Shown piece by piece: positions 6,384 through 57,159 of a stretch of DNA of 64,000 nucleotides (positions are counted from its first letter, which is position 1; the number at the start of each line of letters is the position of its first letter). The stretch is from contig NC_057746.1 in assembly GCF_004010195.1 (NCBI RefSeq), positions 536,901 through 600,900 on the forward strand, in the 5' to 3' direction. A program made the translations under genes and the position numbers. The notes under the pieces were generated by a model, which worked only from the letters and a program-made list of their open reading frames with translations, did not search any database and had not been told where the DNA came from. The stretch comes from Chiloscyllium plagiosum. Lineage: Eukaryota.

Positions 6384-6715
6384 TCAATGTGCATTGTGTT
6401 GTTCCAATAAACTCTGCATTGCCTCTTGTTCCTCACTGGTGGTTACGAATTCTGTTACATTGCTACCTAGATGATATTTCACTGTGTTTCTATCAGAAAC
6501 GTTGCTTGCAGGGTTTAATTTGTCTGTTTCTGAGGGACTCTCTTCTTCATTTGTGGCTTTATTCCCTCCCTCCAGGCCACGTGGATAGTTTGACTCTCTC
6601 TGTAAGGGCTGTGTTTTGAGCTGGGGCTCAGATTTGCTCATCAGCTTCAGTTCCACATTCTTATCCATGATTTCCTGCTGGCGGAGGGTGGGCCTGGTCT
6701 CCAGAAAGGGCTGAG
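6384..6715 (-). CDS. Gene A putative exon 6, long cytoplasmic tail (about 110 aa) to TGA
   Basis: Acceptor attaattccAG in the correct phase. Open hydrophilic frame AQPFLETRPTLRQQEIMDK...SEEQEAMQSLLEQHNAH* in non-repetitive DNA. No family motif confirms it. Confidence 0.55.
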
Positions 6716-11518: not shown

Positions 11519-11638
11519 CTCTCCATGGCTGTTTCCAGATGAGTATTCCAATTATCCCGACAAGAACAAATAATGCGCTGATTGTTGACCCGGTTAAGAT
11601 TCCGAGATGAAGGTATCCCACACTATTTTCTGGAATTT
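11519..11638 (-). CDS. Gene A exon 5, connecting peptide and transmembrane helix
   Basis: Acceptor tatgtttcAG, 120 nt, donor GTAAGA, phase 1-1. EIPENSVGYLHLGILTGSTISALFVLVGIIGILIWKQPWR is a hydrophobic run followed by basic stop-transfer residues. Confidence 0.85.
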
Positions 11639-12088
11639 CTGAAACATAATTGAATAATATCAGGATTGTTTCTCTGATCTTCAATATATTTTCAGTGTTC
11701 TGTTGGCCTAGTTTGATCCTGTTCTATCTTCCAGGAAGATGTTATCTAACCTCGGGATCAACATGACTGATATTTCCACATGGACAGTATACTGACTGAA
11801 AGCATCTCCATTTCAACTGAATTGCAGGTTAGCTCTTCACACAAACACCGTGATAAAAATCAATCCCCAACCTTGTTCGCAAACCGATAATGTACTGCAG
11901 GGGCAGAGTGAGGTTAGGGACATAGCAATTAAGGCATTCAAGACCTGAGCAGCTTGGCTGTCACTCCATTACTGATCTGAGGGAATGCTGCACTGCTCAG
12001 TGGCTGGGGGAACAATGCTGAGGCACGGCTGCATGGTGAAAGGGACACTGTCCATGGAGCTGTTGGAGGGGACATACTCAGGCAATGT

Positions 12089-12681
12089 TGCACTATTCTG
12101 AGGGAGTGCTGCACTGTTGGAGGGTCAGTACTGAGGGAGTGCCACACTGTCAGAGGGTCGGTACTAAGCGAGTGCCGCACTGTCGGAGAGTCAGTACTGA
12201 GGGAGTGCCACACTGTCAGAGGGTCAGTACTGAGCAAGTGCCGCACTGTTGGAGGGTCTGTACTGAGGGAGTGCTGCACTGTTGGAGGGTCAGTACTGAG
12301 GGAGTGCCACAATGTTGGAGGGTCAGTACTGAGGGAGTGCTGAACTGTTGGAGGGTCAGTACTGAGGGAGTGCCGCACTGTTGGAGGGTCAGTACTGATG
12401 GATGGAGATGTTGCACTGTCAGTGGGTCAGTACTGAGGGAGTGCTGCACTGTCAGAGGGTCAGTACTGAGGGAGTGCCACACTGTTGGAGGTCAGGACTG
12501 GGGGAGTGCCACACTGTTGGAGGTTCAGCACTGAGGGAGTGCCGCACTGTCAGCGGGTCAGTACTGACGGAGTGCCGCACTGTCAGCGGGTCAGTACTGA
12601 GGGACTGTTGCACTGTCAGCGGGTCAGTACTGAGGGAGTGCCGCACTGTCAGAGGGTCAGTACTGAGGGAATGCTGCACTG
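12089..12681. repeat. 33-bp minisatellite, about 18 copies
   Basis: Unit CACTGTTGGAGGGTCAGTACTGAGGGAGTGCC(A/G). Confidence 0.95.
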
Positions 12682-15600
12682 ACTAGTTTTCTGTTCTTGC
12701 TGCTGTGGGAATTGAATATTATGTAAATGGAGAAAGACTGCAGAAAGCTACAGCAAAGAGGGATTTGCGAATCCTCATGTATAAATCACAAAAGAAGCTA
12801 CCAGCCTAGTTCAGTGAGTGACAGGGAAGACACATGGGGTGTTGGTTTCAAAGGCTGGATGTTGTTCAAAGGGAATGGAGTGGAAAGGTCAGGAGGTTTT
12901 GCTAAAATTATACAAGGCAGTATTCAAGCCACGACTGGAATACCGTGATCAGTTTTGTATCCCCTATCTAAGGAAAGATATAAAACAGTTCAAAGAAGGT
13001 TCCCTAGGCTGACACCAGGTATTGAGTGACTGTTTCATGAGTAGGTATTGAGTTAGTTGGACACGTACTCATTGGAATTTAGGAGAATGAGAGGTGACCT
13101 TCTGGAAATATGCAAGATTTTGATGGACTTGACAAAGTAGATGCAGAAAGATGATTTCTCCTTCGGAGAGAGCTTGCACCAGAATATATATTTTCAGAAT
13201 TGGTTGTGCATTTAAAATAGAGATGACAAGGTCTCTCGTCTCCCAGAAGACAGTGCATCTGTGGAATTCATTGTCACAGAGATCTGATGAGGCTACAGGA
13301 GGGCAGGTCAGGAGCAACACCAGCTAAGTCTAAAACAGGTGTCAACCAAGTGAAGCCACAACATAGGACTACTTACCCATCAAACAGAGTAATCATCATG
13401 TGATAGGTAAGACTAAATGTTCCAGTAATAAATAGATTAGATCTAAACTCTGCAATCCTAACACACTCTATCATGAATCTTCATCACAACAGCTAAACGG
13501 TATGGAAGACCCACAAATATCTCTACCTTAAACAAAAGGAAGCCAATTAATAAGGTGTTGGTCTGGTAAAGCAAAATTTGTGGGTTCAAACTCTATCCAC
13601 ACTTCCAAATGACTGCCTGAAGCAAGTTCCTTGTATTCTGCATCCACTCAGAATTATACTGAAAGCTGCCTTGCTGTTCTGCCATGTACAATGTTTTCAA
13701 TCTCAATCTCAATTCGAAGTCAGGGAGGCAAAGGGAGCCAAGACGAAGAGTTTGTGGAACGTTTCAGGTTAGACCAGAGGGCAGACTGGACTAGACTTGA
13801 TACTGTGCAAAGTGATAACATTAATTAGTGAAAACTCTCCACTGCAACTGATGCTAAAGGTGTTCAACCATCTTCAACTGCTTCATCCATGAGCTGCCCT
13901 CTAATTTAAGGGACAATATTCAGTTTCATTGGTAACTCCCCAGGTGCTGAAGCAATCTGTGCGCATGTGCAACAAAACCTAGTTCCTATTTAGGCACTGG
14001 GTGGGAAGTGATAAGTAACCTTCATGCCACCCAGTGCCAAGCAATGTCCATCACCAATAATCCAATCAGTTTCCTTGATGTTCAATGACATGACCATCAC
14101 TACGTTTCTCACCACCAACATCCCAGGGTTACCATTTACCAGAATCTTAGCTGAACCAGTTATATCAATGCTGTGGCTGAACAGCAGGGCATTCTGCGAT
14201 GAGTAACTCACATTCTGTCTCCCCAACGCTTGCCCTGCTAGTCATAAGACAGCACTGCGGTAGCATACTCCCCAGTTACTTGGATGAGTGCAGCTTCAAT
14301 AACACTGAGGCATCTCAACACCATTCCTGACAGACCGGTCAGCTTGATTGGTATCCCATCCACCCCCTTCAACTTTCGCTCTCTCCATTACCTATACAGC
14401 AGAGCTGCAGTGGGTACAAATAAATATTATGCAATGCAGCAACTTGACAACCATTCCAAATACATGACTTCTGCTACCTAGAAGGACAAGAGCAGCAGAC
14501 CCAATGAGAACACCACCACCTACAAGCGTGCCCTCTAAGACATACACAGTCACCATGACTTCATCAAGCTCCTAGAATTCCCTTTCTAACTGCACTGTGG
14601 CTGCTCCGAAACCACAGGGGCTACAGCAGTTCGAGGAGGAAGCTCACTGCACCTTCTCAAGGCAGTTAGGGGGGAGTCAACAAATGTCCGTGACACCAAT
14701 AACCCGATGGAAGAATAAAGAAAATACAGGAGGTCTGTGCAGAATACCGTTGGGATAATGGGAAGTAGTGATATGATATTGGGAGCGGAGGGGCTCGTGG
14801 GGGTGATGAGAGGCAAGTAGAGGTGGTAATGGGATAGAGGGTGATAAAGAAATGAATATGATGATAAGATAATGGGGTTCGTGATGGGATGGTAGGGTTG
14901 TTTTTATATTCATCCATGGGATGAGGGAATTGCTAGATAGGCCAGCATTTATTGTCTTTCCAAAAGGGCAGTGCAAGTCAACTGCATTGCTGTGGGTCTG
15001 GAGTCATGTGTAGTCTAGGCCAGGTAACGATGGCAGATTTCCTTCCCAAAAAGGTATTAGTGAACCAGATAGGTTTTTCATGGTCATCATCAATCTCCTA
15101 ATTTCAGATTTTGAACTAAATTCAAATTCCACCATCTACCATGGCAGGATTCAAACCCGGGTCCTCAGAAAATTTCCTGGGTTTCTGGAGTCACAATCCA
15201 GTGCTAGTAACAGGCCATCATCTCCCATGGTGATGGGGTAGGAGGGTAACAAGTGTGCATTGAGAGACACAGTGAGAGTCAGGTGGATGAGGCAGTGAGT
15301 GTTTCCGAACCTGCTGTCATAGTGTCCTGATATCAAATACAACCGATCGCTTCACTTGATCTCACCTGCAATGTCACTCTTCCGAAAGGATTTAAGAAAA
15401 TGAGTATGAGATCTGCATGTCGAGGATACACTTTCCCTGTGTTCCTCTTATCATTTAAATGGGCTCAGCCATATTTATAAACATCAGTATTTACTTCCAT
15501 AACTAGATCCAACTTTAAGAACCGAGCTTTCTTTTCTTGTCTGATTGTTTAGAAAACCTAAATTCTCAAGGTATTCGATTCTAGTTCAGCAACATGTCAG

Positions 15601-16007
15601 AGATTTAACCTCAGGCTCTCCCTGAATTCTGTGTTTACATTCTCTCATGAGGATAAGTAGAAGCAGGAGTAGCGAGATCTGCTCACTCTACCTTTCAATA
15701 CAAACTTGGGTCATTTCATGCCTTAACCCCACTTTCCTGCTTATTCCCCAGATCCCTTCGTTCCCTGAGACACCAAACTCTGTCCACCTCAGACATAAAT
15801 ATATTCAGCAGTGGAACATTCACAGCCTTATAAAGGACACAATTCCAAAGATTCAAAATTCTTCTGAAGGGCCGTACATAGAACAAGGAACTCGCCAGTG
15901 TCTTGGGATTAGTAACTGCAGCCTGTATCTCATTCACTTTCCCTTCTCAGTCAAGCATGTACTCTCACACTCGTGCTGCCCCACATTTCCAGTGCAGTGT
16001 CCCTTAC

Positions 16008-16286
16008 CCCACTGATAGAGCTGGGCCTCTGCCAGGCTGCTGTGGTCAATGTGACAGGAGTATTGATCCTCATCCCCAGCATTGATCTCAATCTCTTTCT
16101 GGATCTGATGGGTCCCATCGTGGTTCGGTCGAACCCCCTAGGATTGGGTCTCAGACATGACCTCTCCATTCCTTAGCCAGGTCACCTCGATGTCTACAGG
16201 ATCAAACCCAGTGACCAGGCAGGAGAGAGTGAGCGGCTTGCCCTGACGACTGGGCTCCCTCCTGGAGATGAACACTTCAGGCTGAA
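16008..16286 (-). CDS. Gene A exon 4, alpha3 Ig C1-set domain with premature TAG
   Basis: Not in the ORF track. 279 nt between AG and GTAAGG: VQPEVFISRREPSRQGKPLTLSCLVTGFDPVDIEVTWLRNGEVMSETQS*GVRPNHDGTHQIQKEIEINAGDEDQYSCHIDHSSLAEAQLYQW. Both Ig cysteines, the core Trp, PNxDGT and YSCxxxH are present. Confidence 0.93.
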
Positions 16287-16402
16287 CTGTGATGGGAAAG
16301 GGTGAAAACACAAACAACGGACAGACACTGAATGGAATGGGAGAGCGGTTTCATAGATCAGTGAGGTTAGATCAGAACATGAAACAAAACTGAAATACAC
16401 AC

Positions 16403-16678
16403 CTTTCCTTTTAAGATATTCCTTTCCAATGCTTAAGCGTGATTTTAAACGTTCAACAAGTTCAACTTCCATCAGCCATTTCCAAAACTTGTTCCAGGAT
16501 TCATCAGAATCCCATTTCTGTTTAGTCTTCACTGCGTTGTGATGTGATGCGACCCATCGCATTCTGTCTGACTCCAAACTAATGTAGTCCTTTCCATCAA
16601 AGGCAACACTCATTGTTCTCTTAATGGAGCCATCTTCAGACAGCTCAACATTCCTTATCCATTGCAAAATGTGCATTC
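16403..16678 (-). CDS. Gene A exon 3, MHC class I alpha2 domain (no cysteines)
   Basis: Acceptor tctttgacAG, 276 nt, donor GTGTGT. GMHILQWIRNVELSEDGSIKRTMSVAFDGKDYISLESDRMRWVASHHNAVKTKQKWDSDESWNKFWKWLMEVELVERLKSRLSIGKEYLKRK contains HILQ, AFDGKDYI and TKQKW. Confidence 0.95.
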
Positions 16679-16944
16679 CTGTCAAAGATAAACAGGGAAA
16701 TAAATCAAATTTTCACGGGAGAAAGGTACTCAATGGGTTCAGTATTAGAGTAAATTTCTCTGATGGCTCAGAATTATACTCCCTGACACACATTTGCACC
16801 CATCATTACATTAGTAACACCCTCTGTGAACTTGGTATTACAGTCTTAGATCCCACAGTGGGCACTGTATTATACTCTGCAGGCTCAGATTTACAACAAT
16901 AAGTTTCTCTATGTTCAGTATTACAACAATGGGTCTCTCTGACT

Positions 16945-19165
16945 CATAGAGTCACAGAGATGTACAGCACAGAAACAGACCCTTCAGTCCAACCCATCCA
17001 TGCCAACCAGATATCCCAACCCAATCTAGTCCCACCTGCCAGCACTTGGCCCATATCCCTCCAAACCCTTCCTATTCATATACCCATCAGAGCACTTTAA
17101 ATGTTGCAATTGTACCAACCTCAACCACTTCCTCTGGCAGCTTATTCCATAGGTACCCGCCTCTGTGTGAAAAAGTTGCCCCTTAAGTCCCTTTCATATC
17201 TTTCCCCTCTCACCCTAAACCTACGCCCTCTAGTTCTGGATTCCCCCACCCCAGGGAAAAGACTTTGTTTATTTATCCTATCCATGCCCTTCATGCTTTT
17301 ATAAACTTCTATAACATTAGTTTAGATTCCCTACATGTGGGAATAGGCCCTTCGGCCCAACAAGTCCACACCGACCCTCTGAAGAGCAACCCACCCAGAC
17401 CCATTCCCCTACATTTACCTCTGACTAATCCGCCTAACACTAGTGGTAATTGAGCATGGCCAATTCCCCTAACCTGCACATCTTTGAACTGTGGGAGGAA
17501 ACAGGAGTACTCAGAGGAAACCCATGCAGACACGGGGAGAATGTGCAAACCCCACACAGACTGTTACCAGAGGCTGGAATTGAACCTGGGTCTCTGGTGC
17601 TCTGAGTCACCGTGCCGCCCCGGTGAGGTCACCTGGGGTCACCCCTTAGCCTCCGATGCTCCAGGGAAAACAGCCCCAACCTGTTCAGCCTCCCTCTATA
17701 GCTCAAACCGTCCAACCTTGATAACATCTTTGTAAATTGCTTCTGAACCTTTTCAAGTTTCACAACATCTTTCCGATAGGAAGGAGACCAGAATTGCACG
17801 CAATATTCAAACAGTGGCCGAACCAATGTCCTGTATAGCCGCAACATGACCTCCCAACTCCTGTACTCAATACTCTGACCAATAAAGGAAAGCATACCAA
17901 ACGTCTTCTTCATTATCCTATCTACCTGCGACTCCACTTTCAAAGAGCTATGAAGCTGTACCCCAAGGTCTCTTTATTCAGCAACACTCCCTAGGACCTT
18001 ACCATTAAGTGTATAAGTCCTGCTAAGATTTGCTTTCCCAAAATGCAGCACCTCACATTTATCCGAATTAAACTCCATCTGCCACTCCTCAGCCCATTGG
18101 CCCATCTGATCAAGATCCTGTTGTAATCTGAAGTAACCCTCTTCACTGTCCACTACATCTCCAATTTTGGTGTCATCTGCAAACTTACTAACTGTATCTC
18201 TTATGCTCACATCCAAATCATTTATATAAATGATGAAAAGTAGAGGGCCCAGCACAGATCCTTGTGGCACTCCACTGGTCACAAGCCTCCAGTCTGAAAA
18301 ACAATCCTGCACCACCACCCTCTGTCTTCTACCTTTGAGCCAATACTGTATCCAAATGGCTAGTTCTCCCTGCATTCCATGAGATCTAATCTTGCTAATC
18401 AGTCTCCCACGGGGAACCTTGTCAAACACCTTACTGATGTCCATATAGATCATGTCAATCGCTCTGCCCTCATCAATCCTCTTTGTTACTTCTTCAAAAA
18501 GCCATGTTGACTATCCCTAATCAGTCCTTGCCTTTTCAAATACATGTACATCCTGTCCCTCAGGATTCCCTCCAACAACTTGCCCACCACTGAGGTCAGG
18601 CTCACTGGTCTATAGTTCCCTGGCTTGTCCTTACCACCCTTCTTAAACAGTGGCACCACATTTGCCAACCTCCAGTCTTCTGGCACCTCACCAGTGACTA
18701 TTGATGATACAAATATCTCATCAAAGAGCCCACTTCTCTAGCTTCCCACAGAGTTCTAGGGTACACTTGATCAGGTTCTGGGGATTTATCCACTTTTATG
18801 TGTTTCAAGACATCCAGCACTTCCTCCTCTGTAATATGGACATTTTCAACATGTTTCCCTACATTCTATATCTTCCATATCCTTTTCCACAGTAAACACT
18901 GATGCAAAATATTCATTTAGTTTCTCCCCCATCTCATGCGGCTCCATACAAAGGCCGCCTTGCTGATCTTTGAGGGGCCCTATTCTCTCCCTCGTTACCC
19001 TTTTGTCCTTAATGTATTTGTAAAAACCCTTTGGATTCTCCTTAACCCTATTTGCCAAAGCTATCTCATGTCCCCTTTTTGCCCTCCTGATTTCACTCTT
19101 AAGTATATTCCTACTGCCTTTATACTCTCCTAAGGGTTCATTCGCTCTATCCTGTCTGTACCTGA
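16945..19165 (-). mobile_element. CR1/HER1-like LINE, 5'-truncated, interrupted by a SINE
   Basis: [34 protein letters not shown] and YRTLVRPLFEYCVQFWSP. SINE at about 17320-17620. Confidence 0.92.
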
Positions 19166-33888: not shown

Positions 33889-34149
33889 CTGATGTTTGGT
33901 TTGTCCCCTTCATTATTGTGTTCAGATTTTCCTTAGCCATGGTCGAAAGTGTATTCCCTTGATTTGTGAGGTATTCCCAGTACTCCTCATCAAAAGAATC
34001 CATCATCCACTGCTGCCGGGGGACTGTCCGCCTGATCTCACTATCATAATAGGTCACTGGAACTCCATTGATCATTGTTACACCAAAATACTCAGGTAGT
34101 TCAGCAACGCCAGAGGTTGCCAGAAATGCCGTAGTAATGGTATTGCTCT
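33889..34149 (-). CDS. Gene A exon 2, MHC class I alpha1 domain
   Basis: Acceptor ttttacAG, 261 nt, donor GTAAGA. Translation ESNTITTAFLATSGVAELPEYFGVTMINGVPVTYYDSEIRRTVPRQQWMMDSFDEEYWEYLTNQGNTLSTMAKENLNTIMKGTNQTS has class I motifs LPEY, YDS, PR.QWM, EYW and the N86 sequon NQT. Confidence 0.95.
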
Positions 34150-34470: not shown

Positions 34471-34522
34471 CGGGAGAGACCCGGGAAAAGCACAGGGAGA
34501 TGGAGAGAAGGATCAGCACCAT
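34471..34522 (-). CDS. Gene A exon 1, signal peptide MVLILLSISLCFSRVSP
   Basis: ATG at 34522, 17 mostly hydrophobic codons plus 1 nt, then donor GTAAGT. Closely similar to the gene B leader. Confidence 0.9.
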
Positions 34523-48960: not shown

Positions 48961-50514
48961 GTCTGTGGAGGGGAACAGTCACACACCCTCCACCCACTCT
49001 CCTGATCTGACCCTTGGCTTTCAGAGCTGTGAGTAAAGATTGAAAAGGCCTCATGGCTCTGAGTAAAGCAGTTGTTATGATCCCAGCTTGTGTTAGTACT
49101 GAACAAGTCAGACCCCAGAATGATATCTGACCTGATAGATATTTTTGTTAATTCATTTTACACAGTAAGCTTCTATCTCATTGTTAAAAACCAAACCTGC
49201 AAACCTTGTGGATTTGTGCTTCAGTGTCTGACACCACGTTAAATAAACCAGAAACAGGAGCAGGCATTCTAAGGGCATCAGCGATGTGAGCCTTAGCATT
49301 TAACAGCAGAAACACATGAGGAGTCCAGTGAGACATCCCTCCTCACATTCAGAACATCTCACTGTCTCTCTTATAAGTTTGTCAAACAGCAAGGTGAGAT
49401 TCTCACTAGGCAGATGTTGTTTTTCTATATCTGTGTCTGAAATTCACAAATGGTTCTGATATGTACTGGCTTCTGAAATAGGCATGGCGAACAGAACACA
49501 GCAAATCTGAGTTTCATGGATTCAGGGCAAGATGTCGGAGGGTAAGGGGCCGTGAAGGTGGGGGATTTAGGAGTTGAGGGGCTATGAGACTGGTGGGTCA
49601 GGGGATGAGGTGCTGTTAGTGTGAGGGAGGTGAGGGACTGTGAAGGTGGGAGTTTAGAGTGGTGAGGGGCTATGAGGATGGGGTGTCAGGGGTCGGGGTG
49701 AGGGTTGGGGTCCGTCTGTAAATAAAAAAATGAGATGACGAACACATTCCGCCCTGGATTTTCTACACCAGCTGGTGCCAGACTTCAGACCAACAGAATG
49801 ATTGAGGTTGAGGTTCCCTCCAGTACCAACCCAGAGCTGCTGACCAGCTCCTGCCAGGACAGGCAGACCAGGGACTCTCCAACTGGGCTGTTTATTCTGG
49901 GTTCAGACTGGTCTGCATGGGTTTTACTGGACAGGTACACACCTACTAAATGCAGTCGGGGGGCAGGAAACTGGGACGATCTGAATTGAGCGGGAATACT
50001 TTATTCCAGTAATTTGTGGGGTTTTTTTTAAATAAGATGCTGATCGGCTTCCTGTCACCTTCAATAGGAAAGGTGGGGAACATTTGAAGGTGCAGAGATT
50101 GAATTGAGAAAGTTTATTTGCTGACAAAGGTCTGAAGTTTTCTCTCTCTCTCTCTCTCCCCCAGATCATCATTCTCACCCCCTCCCTGTCCAGAAGGTCA
50201 CATCCCCAACCTCCCTGTTTATATTTCACACCCAGATCCTCACCCTCCCTGTGGCTGACCGTCCTGGGAACTGGGGAGCAGACCTGGGTATCCCCTTCCT
50301 TGGGGATTTTTATGGAGATAACCAATCAGCTCCTCCCCCTCTCCTTTTGCAGCTTGGAATCCGGAAATGAGTAGATTTCAGCGTTCACAGTAAAATGGAG
50401 CCTCGATAAGCTTGTTGTGTTTTGTTTGATTTCTCTTCAGTTTATAAACACGAGTTGTTCCCCACCCCCCGAGCCTTCCATTCCCAGTCCCCGATGGACT
50501 GGTGCCCTCCCAGA

Positions 50515-50566
50515 ATGTTGCTGATCCTTTTTTCCATCTCCTGGTGTTTCTCCCGGGTCTCTGCGG
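50515..50566 (+). CDS. Gene B exon 1, signal peptide MLLILFSISWCFSRVSA
   Basis: 52 nt from ATG to donor GTGAGT, the same length and phase as gene A exon 1. The intron start gtgagtacagaattcag matches gene A gtaagtacagaattcag. Confidence 0.85.
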
Positions 50567-56200: not shown

Positions 56201-56814
56201 GTTGGTGATCTGTTCGCAATGATGCCTCCTTGGCTGCTTCTAATCTATGAAGATTGTTCCGCACTACAAAGGACATTTTTTTTAAAAACAAAATGTGAAA
56301 TTCCTGTATCATGGAAGCAGGTCATTTGGTCCAATCCTCTGAACAGCATCCCATCCAGACCCACTGCACCTACTGTATCCTTGCATTGCCCATGGCTACT
56401 CCGCCTAGCCTGCACATCTTTGCACTACGGGGAGATGCAGGAAGAACGTGCAAACTCCACGCAGACAGACACCAGAGGGTGGAATCAAATCCAGTCCCTG
56501 GTGAAGTGAGGCGCTGTGTGTTGATTTGTTATGACAGAAGTATGGCTGCACATTTCTGAAGGAGGTAAAATCAGAATCGCCTGCCAGAAATGCGGAGGTC
56601 GTTTTTTATGTCAAAAAAAGAGAATGGAGTGTGTTCCTATCTGGGTGTTATTATCAGAAAATCCACTGTCGGCAGTCCTGGTTGTAGCTGCTTTTTGAGA
56701 TGGTGGATTTGACAGTTTGAGTGACTCCTGTCATTGATTATAGGGCTTTTGGGAATGGGCTTTGCTTGATCGAGTACACAAACCTGACCCTTTCACTTTT
56801 GTTTAAATCTACAG

Positions 56815-57075
56815 ACAGAAAAATCTTCACTGCAGCTTTTATGGCTGTCTCTGGCACAACTGACCTGCCTGAATATGTTGGTGTGGGAATGATCAATGGA
56901 GTTCCTGTGGCCCGTTATGACAGTGACACCCGTCAGACAGTCTCCTTGCAGCGGTGGATGACAGATGCGTACGATGCTAATTACTGGAAAATTCTCACAA
57001 AGCAAGGGGACGAACATTCTGCCAAGGCAAGGAGGGATCTGAGGACGGTAATGAAATGTACAAACCAAACATCAG
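56815..57075 (+). CDS. Gene B exon 2, MHC class I alpha1 domain
   Basis: Acceptor ctacAG, 261 nt, donor GTAAGA. DRKIFTAAFMAVSGTTDLPEYVGVGMINGVPVARYDSDTRQTVSLQRWMTDAYDANYWKILTKQGDEHSAKARRDLRTVMKCTNQTS aligns without gaps to gene A a1 (47/87 identical by manual count). No downstream exons seen before the window end. Confidence 0.93.
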
Positions 57076-57159
57076 GTAAGACCACTGATACAGATTCTCC
57101 CACTAACTACCCTGTTTAAAGCAGATCAGACTATGACTACAGTTAGACTGCAATATGTG

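What the first reader, a model, noticed from the sequence alone, without database searches (positions are those of the whole stretch)
16403..16678. MHC class I alpha2 domain with no cysteines: the C101-C164 disulfide is lost
Seen: the exon is full length (276 nt), open and contains no Cys. The C101 position reads QWIRNVEL (usually Q.MYGC.L) and the C164 position reads EVELVERLK (usually EGTC.EWL). Known: this disulfide is nearly invariant in class I. Inference: both partners became aliphatic residues while D119/G120/D122 and Q96 (b2m-contact region) were kept, which looks like lineage-level remodelling rather than random decay. It could be a new lineage, or a member of an already named shark nonclassical lineage (UBA to UGA); I cannot tell which from here.
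Basis: partly seen in the sequence, partly recalled or inferred. Interest (0 to 1): 0.85.

Follow-up and report, generated by a model that had tools for sequence, protein, structure and literature searches.

The report
Shark class I gene without groove disulfide
This exon belongs to a large shark-only family of MHC class I-like genes that all lost a normally near-universal disulfide bond, so the loss is an old family trait and not decay of this one copy.

Summary
Window 16403-16678, minus strand, is a 276-nt, phase-1, open alpha2 exon with no Cys. It matches Pfam MHC_I at 1.5e-15. Val sits at the C101 position and Leu at the C164 position.

It is not private decay. In 89 alpha2 domains of close relatives from 13 shark species, position 101 is never Cys (V82 A3 I2 L2). 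Position 164 is L30 F23 C9 Y8 S7 G5 and others. Of 164 other class I alpha2 domains, none lacks both Cys.

The Cys101-less rows form one clade. The window pairs with Mustelus asterias P0160, which is 86% identical in alpha2.

The family is multicopy, was found only in sharks, and lies beside a UDA-like gene. It is therefore most likely the published UEA lineage. I could not confirm the name, because the UEA paper is not held.

The window gene has six exons with good splice sites, and it is transcribed and spliced in RNA-like runs. Its alpha3 exon carries one in-frame TAG in this assembly. Public contigs could neither confirm nor refute that stop.

Other first-stage notes (s1-886227, s1-886078, s1-883701) flagged Cys-less alpha2 domains elsewhere in this genome.

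Verdict: real, family-wide, and probably a new member of a known kind.

The parts
34471..34522 (-). Leader (signal peptide) coding exon: ATG at 34522-34520, donor GT at 34470-34469
   Evidence: Read. The hydrophobic leader resembles the leaders of family proteins.
33889..34149 (-). alpha1 exon: 261 nt, phase 1, open, no Cys, N-Q-T glycosylation motif at its end
   Evidence: Pfam MHC_I 4.2e-07. 80% identical to P0160 alpha1, and 11 of 11 family-conserved columns kept. Its 3' end is joined to the alpha2 exon in contigs of runs X3 and X15.
16403..16678 (-). alpha2 exon (the finding): 276 nt, phase 1, open, Cys-free
   Evidence: Found with 0 differences over 16490-16681 in contigs of four runs.
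16647..16649 (-). GTT codon = Val at the position of Cys101
   Evidence: Alignment to 7cpo_A. Family column: V82 A3 I2 L2 of 89.
16458..16460 (-). CTT codon = Leu at the position of Cys164
   Evidence: Alignment to 7cpo_A. Family column: L30 F23 C9 Y8 S7 G5 D3 and others, of 89.
16008..16286 (-). alpha3 exon (C1-set Ig domain): 279 nt, phase 1, both Ig Cys kept, one in-frame TAG
   Evidence: Pfam C1-set 2.5e-09 for the part before the stop. 65 of 67 family-conserved columns kept.
16138..16140 (-). In-frame TAG where intact relatives have Ser (..SSG..)
   Evidence: All contigs of four runs read G, not T, at 16139 (= TCG Ser). Those contigs are high-depth, paralog-collapsed alpha3 sequence.
11519..11638 (-). 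Connecting peptide / transmembrane exon: 120 nt, phase 1, open
   Evidence: tblastn with P0160, P0151 and P0154.
6384..6715 (-). Long cytoplasmic-tail exon (about 110 aa) ending in TGA at 6386-6384
   Evidence: 43% identical over 114 residues to the tail of Heterodontus P0003 and 77% to that of C. punctatum P0166. No Pfam match.

Best explanation
The exon is the alpha2 exon of one copy of a large, shark-restricted family of nonclassical MHC class I genes, most likely the lineage published as UEA. The covalent bond that ties the alpha2 helix to the floor of the groove (C101-C164) was given up at the base of this family. Cys101 became Val once and stayed so. The orphaned Cys164 was then replaced many times, mostly by large hydrophobic residues: Leu in the sublineage of this gene, Phe or Tyr in others. 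A minority of copies still keep it unpaired. By inference, the Val/Leu pair fills the disulfide's site by hydrophobic packing. The predicted fold of the intact Mustelus relative is a normal class I fold, so the helix is held non-covalently. By inference from recalled knowledge of class I assembly, such a molecule would fold without the oxidoreductase step that classical class I needs. The equivalents of Y159, W167 and Y171 are L, R and R, so it is not a classical peptide presenter. The T-K-x-K-W motif, Q96 and D-G-K-D are kept. The window copy is a complete six-exon gene that is transcribed and spliced. In this assembly it carries one nonsense codon in alpha3, so it is either a very young pseudogene or null allele, or the stop is private to the assembled haplotype.
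For: Shown:
- Exon anatomy and the absence of Cys.
- V and L at the two Cys columns.
- 0 of 89 family alpha2 domains have Cys at 101 and 9 of 89 have it at 164. Among 164 other class I alpha2 domains, 163 and 159 have Cys at those positions and none lacks both.
- All 90 Cys101-less rows form one clade. SH-aLRT is 95 with all columns and 90.4 with the two trait columns masked. There is 1 change at 101 and 7-8 Cys/non-Cys changes at 164.
- The window is sister to Mustelus P0160 (98-99), inside a 27-row clade (support 93) that is nearly all V/L and spans Galeomorphii and Squalomorphii.
- All 100 hits at E<=1e-60 to P0160 come from 13 shark species or, in one case, an unnamed JGI contig; none is a ray or chimaera.
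- The window keeps 11/11, 33/36 and 65/67 family-conserved columns in alpha1, alpha2 and alpha3.
- Contigs of X3 and X15 cover exons only and carry the alpha1-alpha2 and alpha2-alpha3 junctions.
- The AlphaFold2 model of P0160 has block-mean pLDDT of 89 or more from residue 21 to 290. Its best PDB matches are classical class I, with TM 0.93-0.95 and rmsd 1.6-2.0 A.

For the UEA name:
- MBE 2023 says shark MHC-Ib comprises multicopy UEA beside single-copy UDA, plus a separate multicopy UBA cluster.
- Cells 2025 says UBA derives from UAA and UEA is more ancient.
- The family here is about 35% identical to UAA.
- In C. plagiosum and H. francisci it shares a contig with a UDA-like gene (the cluster of nurse shark QGX07421.1), with protein accession numbers 17 and 28 apart.
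Against: - No sequence labelled UEA was available, so the name rests on elimination and on my recall of the 2021 abstract.
- The alpha2-only trees have 89-91 columns and many unresolved forks. The trees warn of a long-branch contact with the lungfish row.
- The 89 domains are representatives of 90%-identity clusters and include isoforms, so they are not 89 genes.
- The packing of Val against Leu is inferred from homology. The fold tool gives no coordinates, and AlphaFold2 is not sensitive to a missing disulfide.
- The TAG means this particular copy may make no full-length protein.
- No contig in four runs shows the window's own alpha3 letters at 16139, 16241, 16248 or 16250. The stop therefore has no independent support and no independent refutation.
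Confidence: 0.8

Rival explanations
1. Random decay: the gene is a dead copy, and both Cys were lost by drift after it was inactivated.
For: There is an in-frame TAG in alpha3. A reverse-transcriptase fragment sits in the 17-kb first intron. No annotated ortholog was found in four annotated orectolobiform genomes.
Against: The same two substitutions occur in predicted intact proteins of 13 shark species, and position 101 is never Cys in 89 domains. The window keeps 33 of 36 family-conserved alpha2 columns, and all other exons are open with good splice sites. The gene is transcribed and spliced.
Confidence: 0.03
2. A new, unnamed class I lineage, distinct from UBA, UCA, UDA, UEA, UFA and UGA.
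For: No protein in the searches carries a lineage name; all are automatic 'F10 alpha chain-like' labels. In the held literature I found no text on UEA sequence features.
Against: With about 100 clusters, this is by far the largest class I family in every shark genome searched. A survey that maps 'all MHC-Ib genes' names only UEA and UBA as multicopy. UBA is said to derive from UAA, yet this family is only about 35% identical to UAA and sits on a long branch. UFA and UGA are single or low copy. By my recall, UCA is limited to Squaliformes.
Confidence: 0.12
3. The gene is functional, and the TAG is a null allele or an error of the assembled haplotype.
For: It is a single substitution in an otherwise well-kept gene. 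Spliced alpha1-alpha2-alpha3 transcripts exist in two runs. Every contig that covers 16139 in four runs reads the Ser codon.
Against: Those alpha3 contigs have depths of about 300 to several thousand, against 12-41 for the unique parts. They also differ from the window at 2-6 alpha3 sites in all, the stop site included. They therefore come mostly from paralogs, and contigs drop rare variants. Substitution errors are unusual in long-read assemblies (general knowledge).
Confidence: 0.45

Closest known systems
Shark nonclassical MHC class I lineage UEA (Almeida et al. 2021, J Immunol 207:824; paper not held, abstract recalled; named in PMC10751288 and PMC12562908)
   Same: It is a multicopy family and was found in sharks only. 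It maps on the chromosome that holds the other class I genes, beside a UDA-like gene. It is far from classical UAA, and most peptide N-terminus anchors are lost.
   Different: Nothing was shown to differ. Identity with published UEA sequences could not be tested. I could not see whether the paper reports the missing alpha2 disulfide.
Classical class I: shark class I 6lup_A, the unidentified chain 7cpo_A, and chicken BF2 chains in the PDB
   Same: The exon plan, domain order and predicted fold are the same (TM 0.90-0.95). Q96, D-G-K-D, T-K-x-K-W and the alpha3 Ig disulfide are kept.
   Different: There is no C101-C164 bond. Gly100 is replaced by Ser/Thr/Ile/Asn. There are two family-invariant Trp in the alpha2 helix. 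The Y159, W167 and Y171 equivalents are changed. The cytoplasmic tail is long.
MHC class II alpha1 domain (a groove domain that naturally has no intradomain disulfide; passage in PMC8010645)
   Same: It is a groove half-domain of helix on sheet that is held without a covalent link.
   Different: It is a different chain and a different domain. The class I alpha2 counterpart in class II is beta1 (general knowledge), and the passage says beta1 keeps its two canonical Cys.
Scattered class I alpha2 domains that lack one Cys (6 of 164 non-family domains: P0087, P0001 twice, P0012, P0034, P0004)
   Same: One partner of the pair is replaced.
   Different: Each lacks only one Cys. They are isolated copies inside predicted tandem fusions and do not form a family. 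None lacks both.

Membership tests
MHC class I heavy chain | alpha1 and alpha2 match the MHC_I profile above the curated cut-off | tested here: met
   alpha2 scores 57.6 bits and alpha1 30.1 bits, against a cut-off of 28.3.
MHC class I heavy chain | Membrane-proximal C1-set Ig domain with its two Cys | tested here: met
   C1-set at 2.5e-09. Both Cys are present, but one in-frame TAG lies between them.
MHC class I heavy chain | One exon per domain, phase-1 introns, in the order leader / alpha1 / alpha2 / alpha3 / TM / tail | tested here: met
MHC class I heavy chain | alpha2 Cys pair, described as 'conserved in most MHC molecules' (PMC4364491, passages) | tested here: not met
   The exon has no Cys. 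This is a hallmark and not a requirement. It is also absent from all 89 family domains as a pair.
Classical (peptide-presenting) class I, UAA | Conserved residues that bind the peptide termini | tested here: not met
   The Y159, W167 and Y171 equivalents are L, R and R. The T143/K146/W147-equivalent motif is kept. HLA numbering is approximate, because shark chains differ from it by single-residue indels.
Shark UEA | Multicopy in sharks | tested here: met
   100 clusters at E<=1e-60 across 13 species, with up to about 20 clusters on one chromosome-size contig. Isoforms inflate the count.
Shark UEA | Not found in rays or chimaeras (recalled from the 2021 abstract) | tested here: met
   No ray or chimaera protein appears among the family hits. 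The Mobula and Callorhinchus hits keep both Cys and fall outside the clade. This is limited by the word-based candidate step and by 50% cluster representatives.
Shark UEA | Lies in the MHC-Ib cluster next to single-copy UDA (PMC10751288, section 9) | tested here: inconclusive
   The family and a UDA-like gene share a contig and have close accession numbers in C. plagiosum and H. francisci. The window itself holds no flanking marker gene that I identified.
Shark UEA | Sequence identity with the published UEA entries | not testable with these tools
   PMC8454915, PMC7002201 and the DOI are not held. No hit carries a UEA label.
Shark UDA | Groups with nurse shark QGX07421.1 and chimaera class I (the UDA label is my recall) | tested here: not met
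   31% alpha2 identity. They form a separate starred clade and both keep the Cys pair.
Shark UFA/UGA (CD1-like) | Single or low copy (PMC12562908, passage) | tested here: not met
   The family is highly multicopy. No UFA or UGA sequence was available for comparison.

The most novel reading that the evidence does not exclude
The family-wide loss of the alpha2 disulfide may never have been described. If so, this would be the first whole vertebrate class I family known to do without the C101-C164 bond. The loss has a readable order: Cys101 to Val once at the base, then the orphan Cys164 replaced at least seven times. It is accompanied by family-specific changes around the site (Gly100 lost, two invariant Trp in the helix). 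It would be a natural test case for class I folding without the redox step of the peptide-loading complex.
Probability: 0.3. Interest if true: 0.6.

Novelty: new member of a known kind. Interest (0 to 1): 0.35.

Why it matters
The C101-C164 bond is treated as a hallmark of class I and class I-like molecules. In classical molecules its formation is part of quality control during assembly (recalled knowledge). This family has about a hundred sequence clusters and spans both shark superorders. It shows that the bond can be given up for good while the rest of the domain stays under constraint. It also shows which residues take its place. That gives structural immunologists ready-made natural variants (V/L, V/F, V/Y, V/G, and V with an orphan Cys) for testing how a groove behaves without the staple. 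It also gives annotators a simple marker, Val at 101, for assigning shark class Ib genes. For this window the practical result is an exon-level gene model and a warning that the copy has a stop codon in alpha3.

Tried and rejected
I looked for a second alpha2 or alpha3 copy in the window and found none. The only other family exon is an alpha1 on the plus strand at 56808-57077.

Conservation was judged at protein level only.

I tried to read the two J Immunol papers that define UDA and UEA, by PMC id and by DOI. They are not held.

Seven of my seven full-text searches, plus passages of eight held papers, gave no statement on whether UEA keeps the alpha2 Cys pair. I cannot say whether the loss is in print. 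I did not ask for supplements, which are closed. Those of PMC10751288 list the coordinates and accessions of the mapped genes and would settle the name.

I tried to verify the TAG with public runs. Only Logan contigs were available for the holders, and the alpha3 contigs are dominated by paralogs. The result is inconclusive.

A second family search with the closest relative, P0160, found no extra ortholog.

I considered that a Cys might merely be shifted in the alignment. I rejected this because the exon has no Cys at all. I also considered that alpha1 supplies a replacement Cys. I rejected this because the window's alpha1 has none.

Every search used single exons, and alpha3 was used as two pieces split at the stop. 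The fold is of the database protein P0160.

Full report
**What is there.** The finding's coordinates hold an exon on the minus strand. Read from 16678 down to 16403, it has an AG acceptor, a GT donor, 276 nt and phase 1, and its 91 codons are open and contain no Cys. The peptide matches the second half of Pfam MHC_I, profile positions 93-179 of 179, at E 1.5e-15. Its best solved relatives are class I heavy chains. In the gap-free alignment to 7cpo_A, the window's Val (codon 16649-16647) faces the first alpha2 Cys and its Leu (codon 16460-16458) faces the second.

**The gene around it.** With family proteins as guides and by reading the borders, I found six exons, all with AG/GT borders and in phase 1:
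- leader, 34522-34471
- alpha1, 34149-33889
- alpha2, 16678-16403
- alpha3, 16286-16008
- transmembrane, 11638-11519
- a long tail exon, 6715-6384

The first intron is 17 kb. It holds a masked gap and a reverse-transcriptase fragment (RVT_1, 1.3e-21). Every exon is open except alpha3, which has one TAG at 16140-16138 where intact relatives read Ser. All searches were done exon by exon.

**Is the Cys loss private or shared?** A phmmer search of the alpha2 peptide against 1.84 billion cluster representatives gave 391 hits at E<=0.001. The closest hits that are not predicted tandem fusions are shark proteins whose alpha2 domains lack the Cys pair. Word-based searches with two of them, P0003 and P0160, returned the same set. 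The 100 clusters at E<=1e-60 to P0160 all come from 13 shark species or, in one case, an unnamed JGI contig.

From the 263 proteins then held, phmmer found 293 alpha2-like stretches in 257 proteins. I kept the 253 that covered query positions 12 to 85 and dropped 40 partial ones. The two Cys columns read as follows:

| alpha2 domains | position 101 | position 164 |
|---|---|---|
| 89 domains at least 50% identical to the window, from 87 proteins | V 82, A 3, I 2, L 2; Cys in 0 | L 30, F 23, C 9, Y 8, S 7, G 5, D 3; W, H, T, V once each |
| the other 164 domains | Cys in 163 | Cys in 159 |

In the second group, six domains lack one Cys and none lacks both. These rows are 90%-identity cluster representatives and include isoforms, so they do not count genes.

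**Tree.** An alpha2 tree was built from the window plus the 107 rows for which I had a species label. The 146 unlabelled rows were left out. All 90 Cys101-less rows fall on one side of a long branch, with SH-aLRT 95. With the two trait columns masked, support is 90.4.
- Position 101 needs one change. Cys versus non-Cys at 164 needs 7-8 changes inside the family.
- The simplest reading is that Cys101 was lost once at the base, and the orphan Cys164 was then replaced repeatedly. The trees have only 89-91 columns, are poorly resolved, and warn of a long-branch contact with the lungfish row.
- The window is sister to Mustelus asterias P0160 (support 98-99; 86% identical in alpha2).
- The pair sits in a 27-row clade (support 93) that is nearly all V/L. 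That clade holds Heptranchias (Squalomorphii) as well as galeomorph sharks. The state seen in the window is therefore old.

**State of this copy.** The window keeps 11 of 11 (alpha1), 33 of 36 (alpha2) and 65 of 67 (alpha3) columns that are at least 90% conserved in the family. One of the three alpha2 changes is shared with P0160.

Logan contigs of four runs were laid on 15900-16800.
- The stretch 16490-16681, which covers most of the alpha2 exon, is present with 0 differences in all four.
- Runs X3 (organism A) and X15 (organism B) cover exons only. They carry the 16286-to-16403 joint, which is the GT..AG intron on the minus strand removed.
- They also carry a loose end at 16681 that equals the 3' end of the alpha1 exon. 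The gene is therefore transcribed and spliced from alpha1 through alpha3.
- At 16139, the middle letter of the TAG, every contig in all four runs reads the Ser codon.
- Those alpha3 contigs have depths of about 300 to several thousand, against 12-41 for unique sequence. They also differ from the window at 2-6 alpha3 sites in all, the stop site included. They are paralog-dominated, and contigs drop rare variants.

The stop is thus neither confirmed nor refuted. I put roughly even odds on a young pseudogene or null allele against a functional gene.

**How it probably works.** AlphaFold2 on the intact relative P0160, with a 101-row alignment, gives block-mean pLDDT of 89 or more from residue 21 to 290. 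The residue at position 101 lies in a floor strand and the residue at 164 lies in the long alpha2 helix. Foldseek finds classical class I chains at TM 0.93-0.95 and rmsd 1.6-2.0 A.

By homology, the Val/Ile and Leu side chains occupy the disulfide's site. This step is inferred, since no coordinates were available.

Family-specific changes surround the site:
- Gly100 becomes Ser, Thr, Ile or Asn.
- Met98 becomes Ile.
- There are two invariant Trp in the helix.

The N-terminal anchor equivalents are changed (Y159, W167 and Y171 read L, R and R), while T-K-x-K-W is kept. HLA numbers are approximate here. The molecule is therefore nonclassical. Its ligand is unknown.

**Name.** Section 9 of PMC10751288, read whole, says shark MHC-Ib genes form a cluster with single-copy UDA and multicopy UEA, plus a separate multicopy UBA cluster. 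A passage of PMC12562908 says UBA derives from UAA, UEA is more ancient, and UDA, UFA and UGA are single-copy.
- The family here is the large one. It is about 35% identical to UAA.
- It shares contigs, and has nearby accession numbers, with a UDA-like gene. That gene is in the cluster of nurse shark QGX07421.1, which groups with chimaera sequences.
- By elimination the family is UEA. My recall of the 2021 abstract (sharks only, very large family, three sublineages) agrees.
- The paper is not held and no hit is labelled UEA.

**Novelty.** I found no held text that says whether UEA lacks the alpha2 Cys pair, using the searches and passages of PMC10751288, PMC12562908, PMC6523485, PMC8713811, PMC8010645, PMC9586880, PMC11958417 and PMC4364491. 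Grimholt et al. [quoted passage not shown] The loss is therefore unusual, but the defining paper very likely shows it in its alignments.

I rate the finding as a new member of a known kind. Other first-stage notes flagged Cys-less alpha2 domains elsewhere in this genome. I could not read those places.

**Limits.** Runs and organisms are coded. From the plus-strand alpha1 exon, which is 94% identical to a C. punctatum protein, the genome is from a shark close to Chiloscyllium.

Noticed in passing
window 56808-57077 (+), with a leader-like match at 50494-50565 (+): This is the alpha1 exon of a second family gene on the opposite strand. It is 94% identical to C. punctatum P0166 and 90% to H. ocellatum P0163. 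Its alpha2 is not in the window. This points to a species close to Chiloscyllium.
   Followed up: partly
window 6384-6715 (-): A tail exon of about 110 aa, acidic and Ser/Thr-rich, with no Pfam match. It is conserved with the tails of P0003, P0154, P0166 and P0161. It seems typical of the V/L sublineage.
   Followed up: partly
window 16203 (-), alpha3: The conserved G-F-Y-P motif of the Ig domain reads G-F-D-P here. The same variant occurs in C. plagiosum P0010 and in much of the contig depth of run X1, so several paralogs share it.
   Followed up: partly
window 16008-16286, run X1: In a DNA-type run the alpha3 exon has summed contig depth in the thousands, against about 12 for the unique flanks. 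Nearly identical alpha3 exons must exist in very many copies in this genome.
   Followed up: no
P0010 (C. plagiosum XP_043533873): Its predicted protein leaves the alpha3 frame right after the same ..SSG.. site where the window has its stop. It then follows the frame of window ORF 15951-16169. This is either a second damaged copy at the same spot or a prediction artefact.
   Followed up: no
P0003 versus P0151 (Heterodontus francisci isoforms X2 and X1): Isoform X2 skips the transmembrane exon and joins alpha3 directly to the tail. This suggests a possible soluble form in this sublineage.
   Followed up: no
window 17629-19058 (-): There are reverse-transcriptase ORF fragments of a retroelement inside the 17-kb alpha1-alpha2 intron (RVT_1, 1.3e-21 for 17977-18453).
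   Followed up: partly
window 11938-12686, both strands: There are long ORFs made of a repeated unit of about 10 residues on both strands. This is a tandem repeat in the alpha3-TM intron and is not coding.
   Followed up: no
PDB 9ch4_A: The best solved match of the alpha1 exon (3.4e-12) is an 'Ig-like domain-containing protein' of 268 aa. It may be one of the recently solved shark nonclassical molecules. It was not among the top 60 for alpha2.
   Followed up: no
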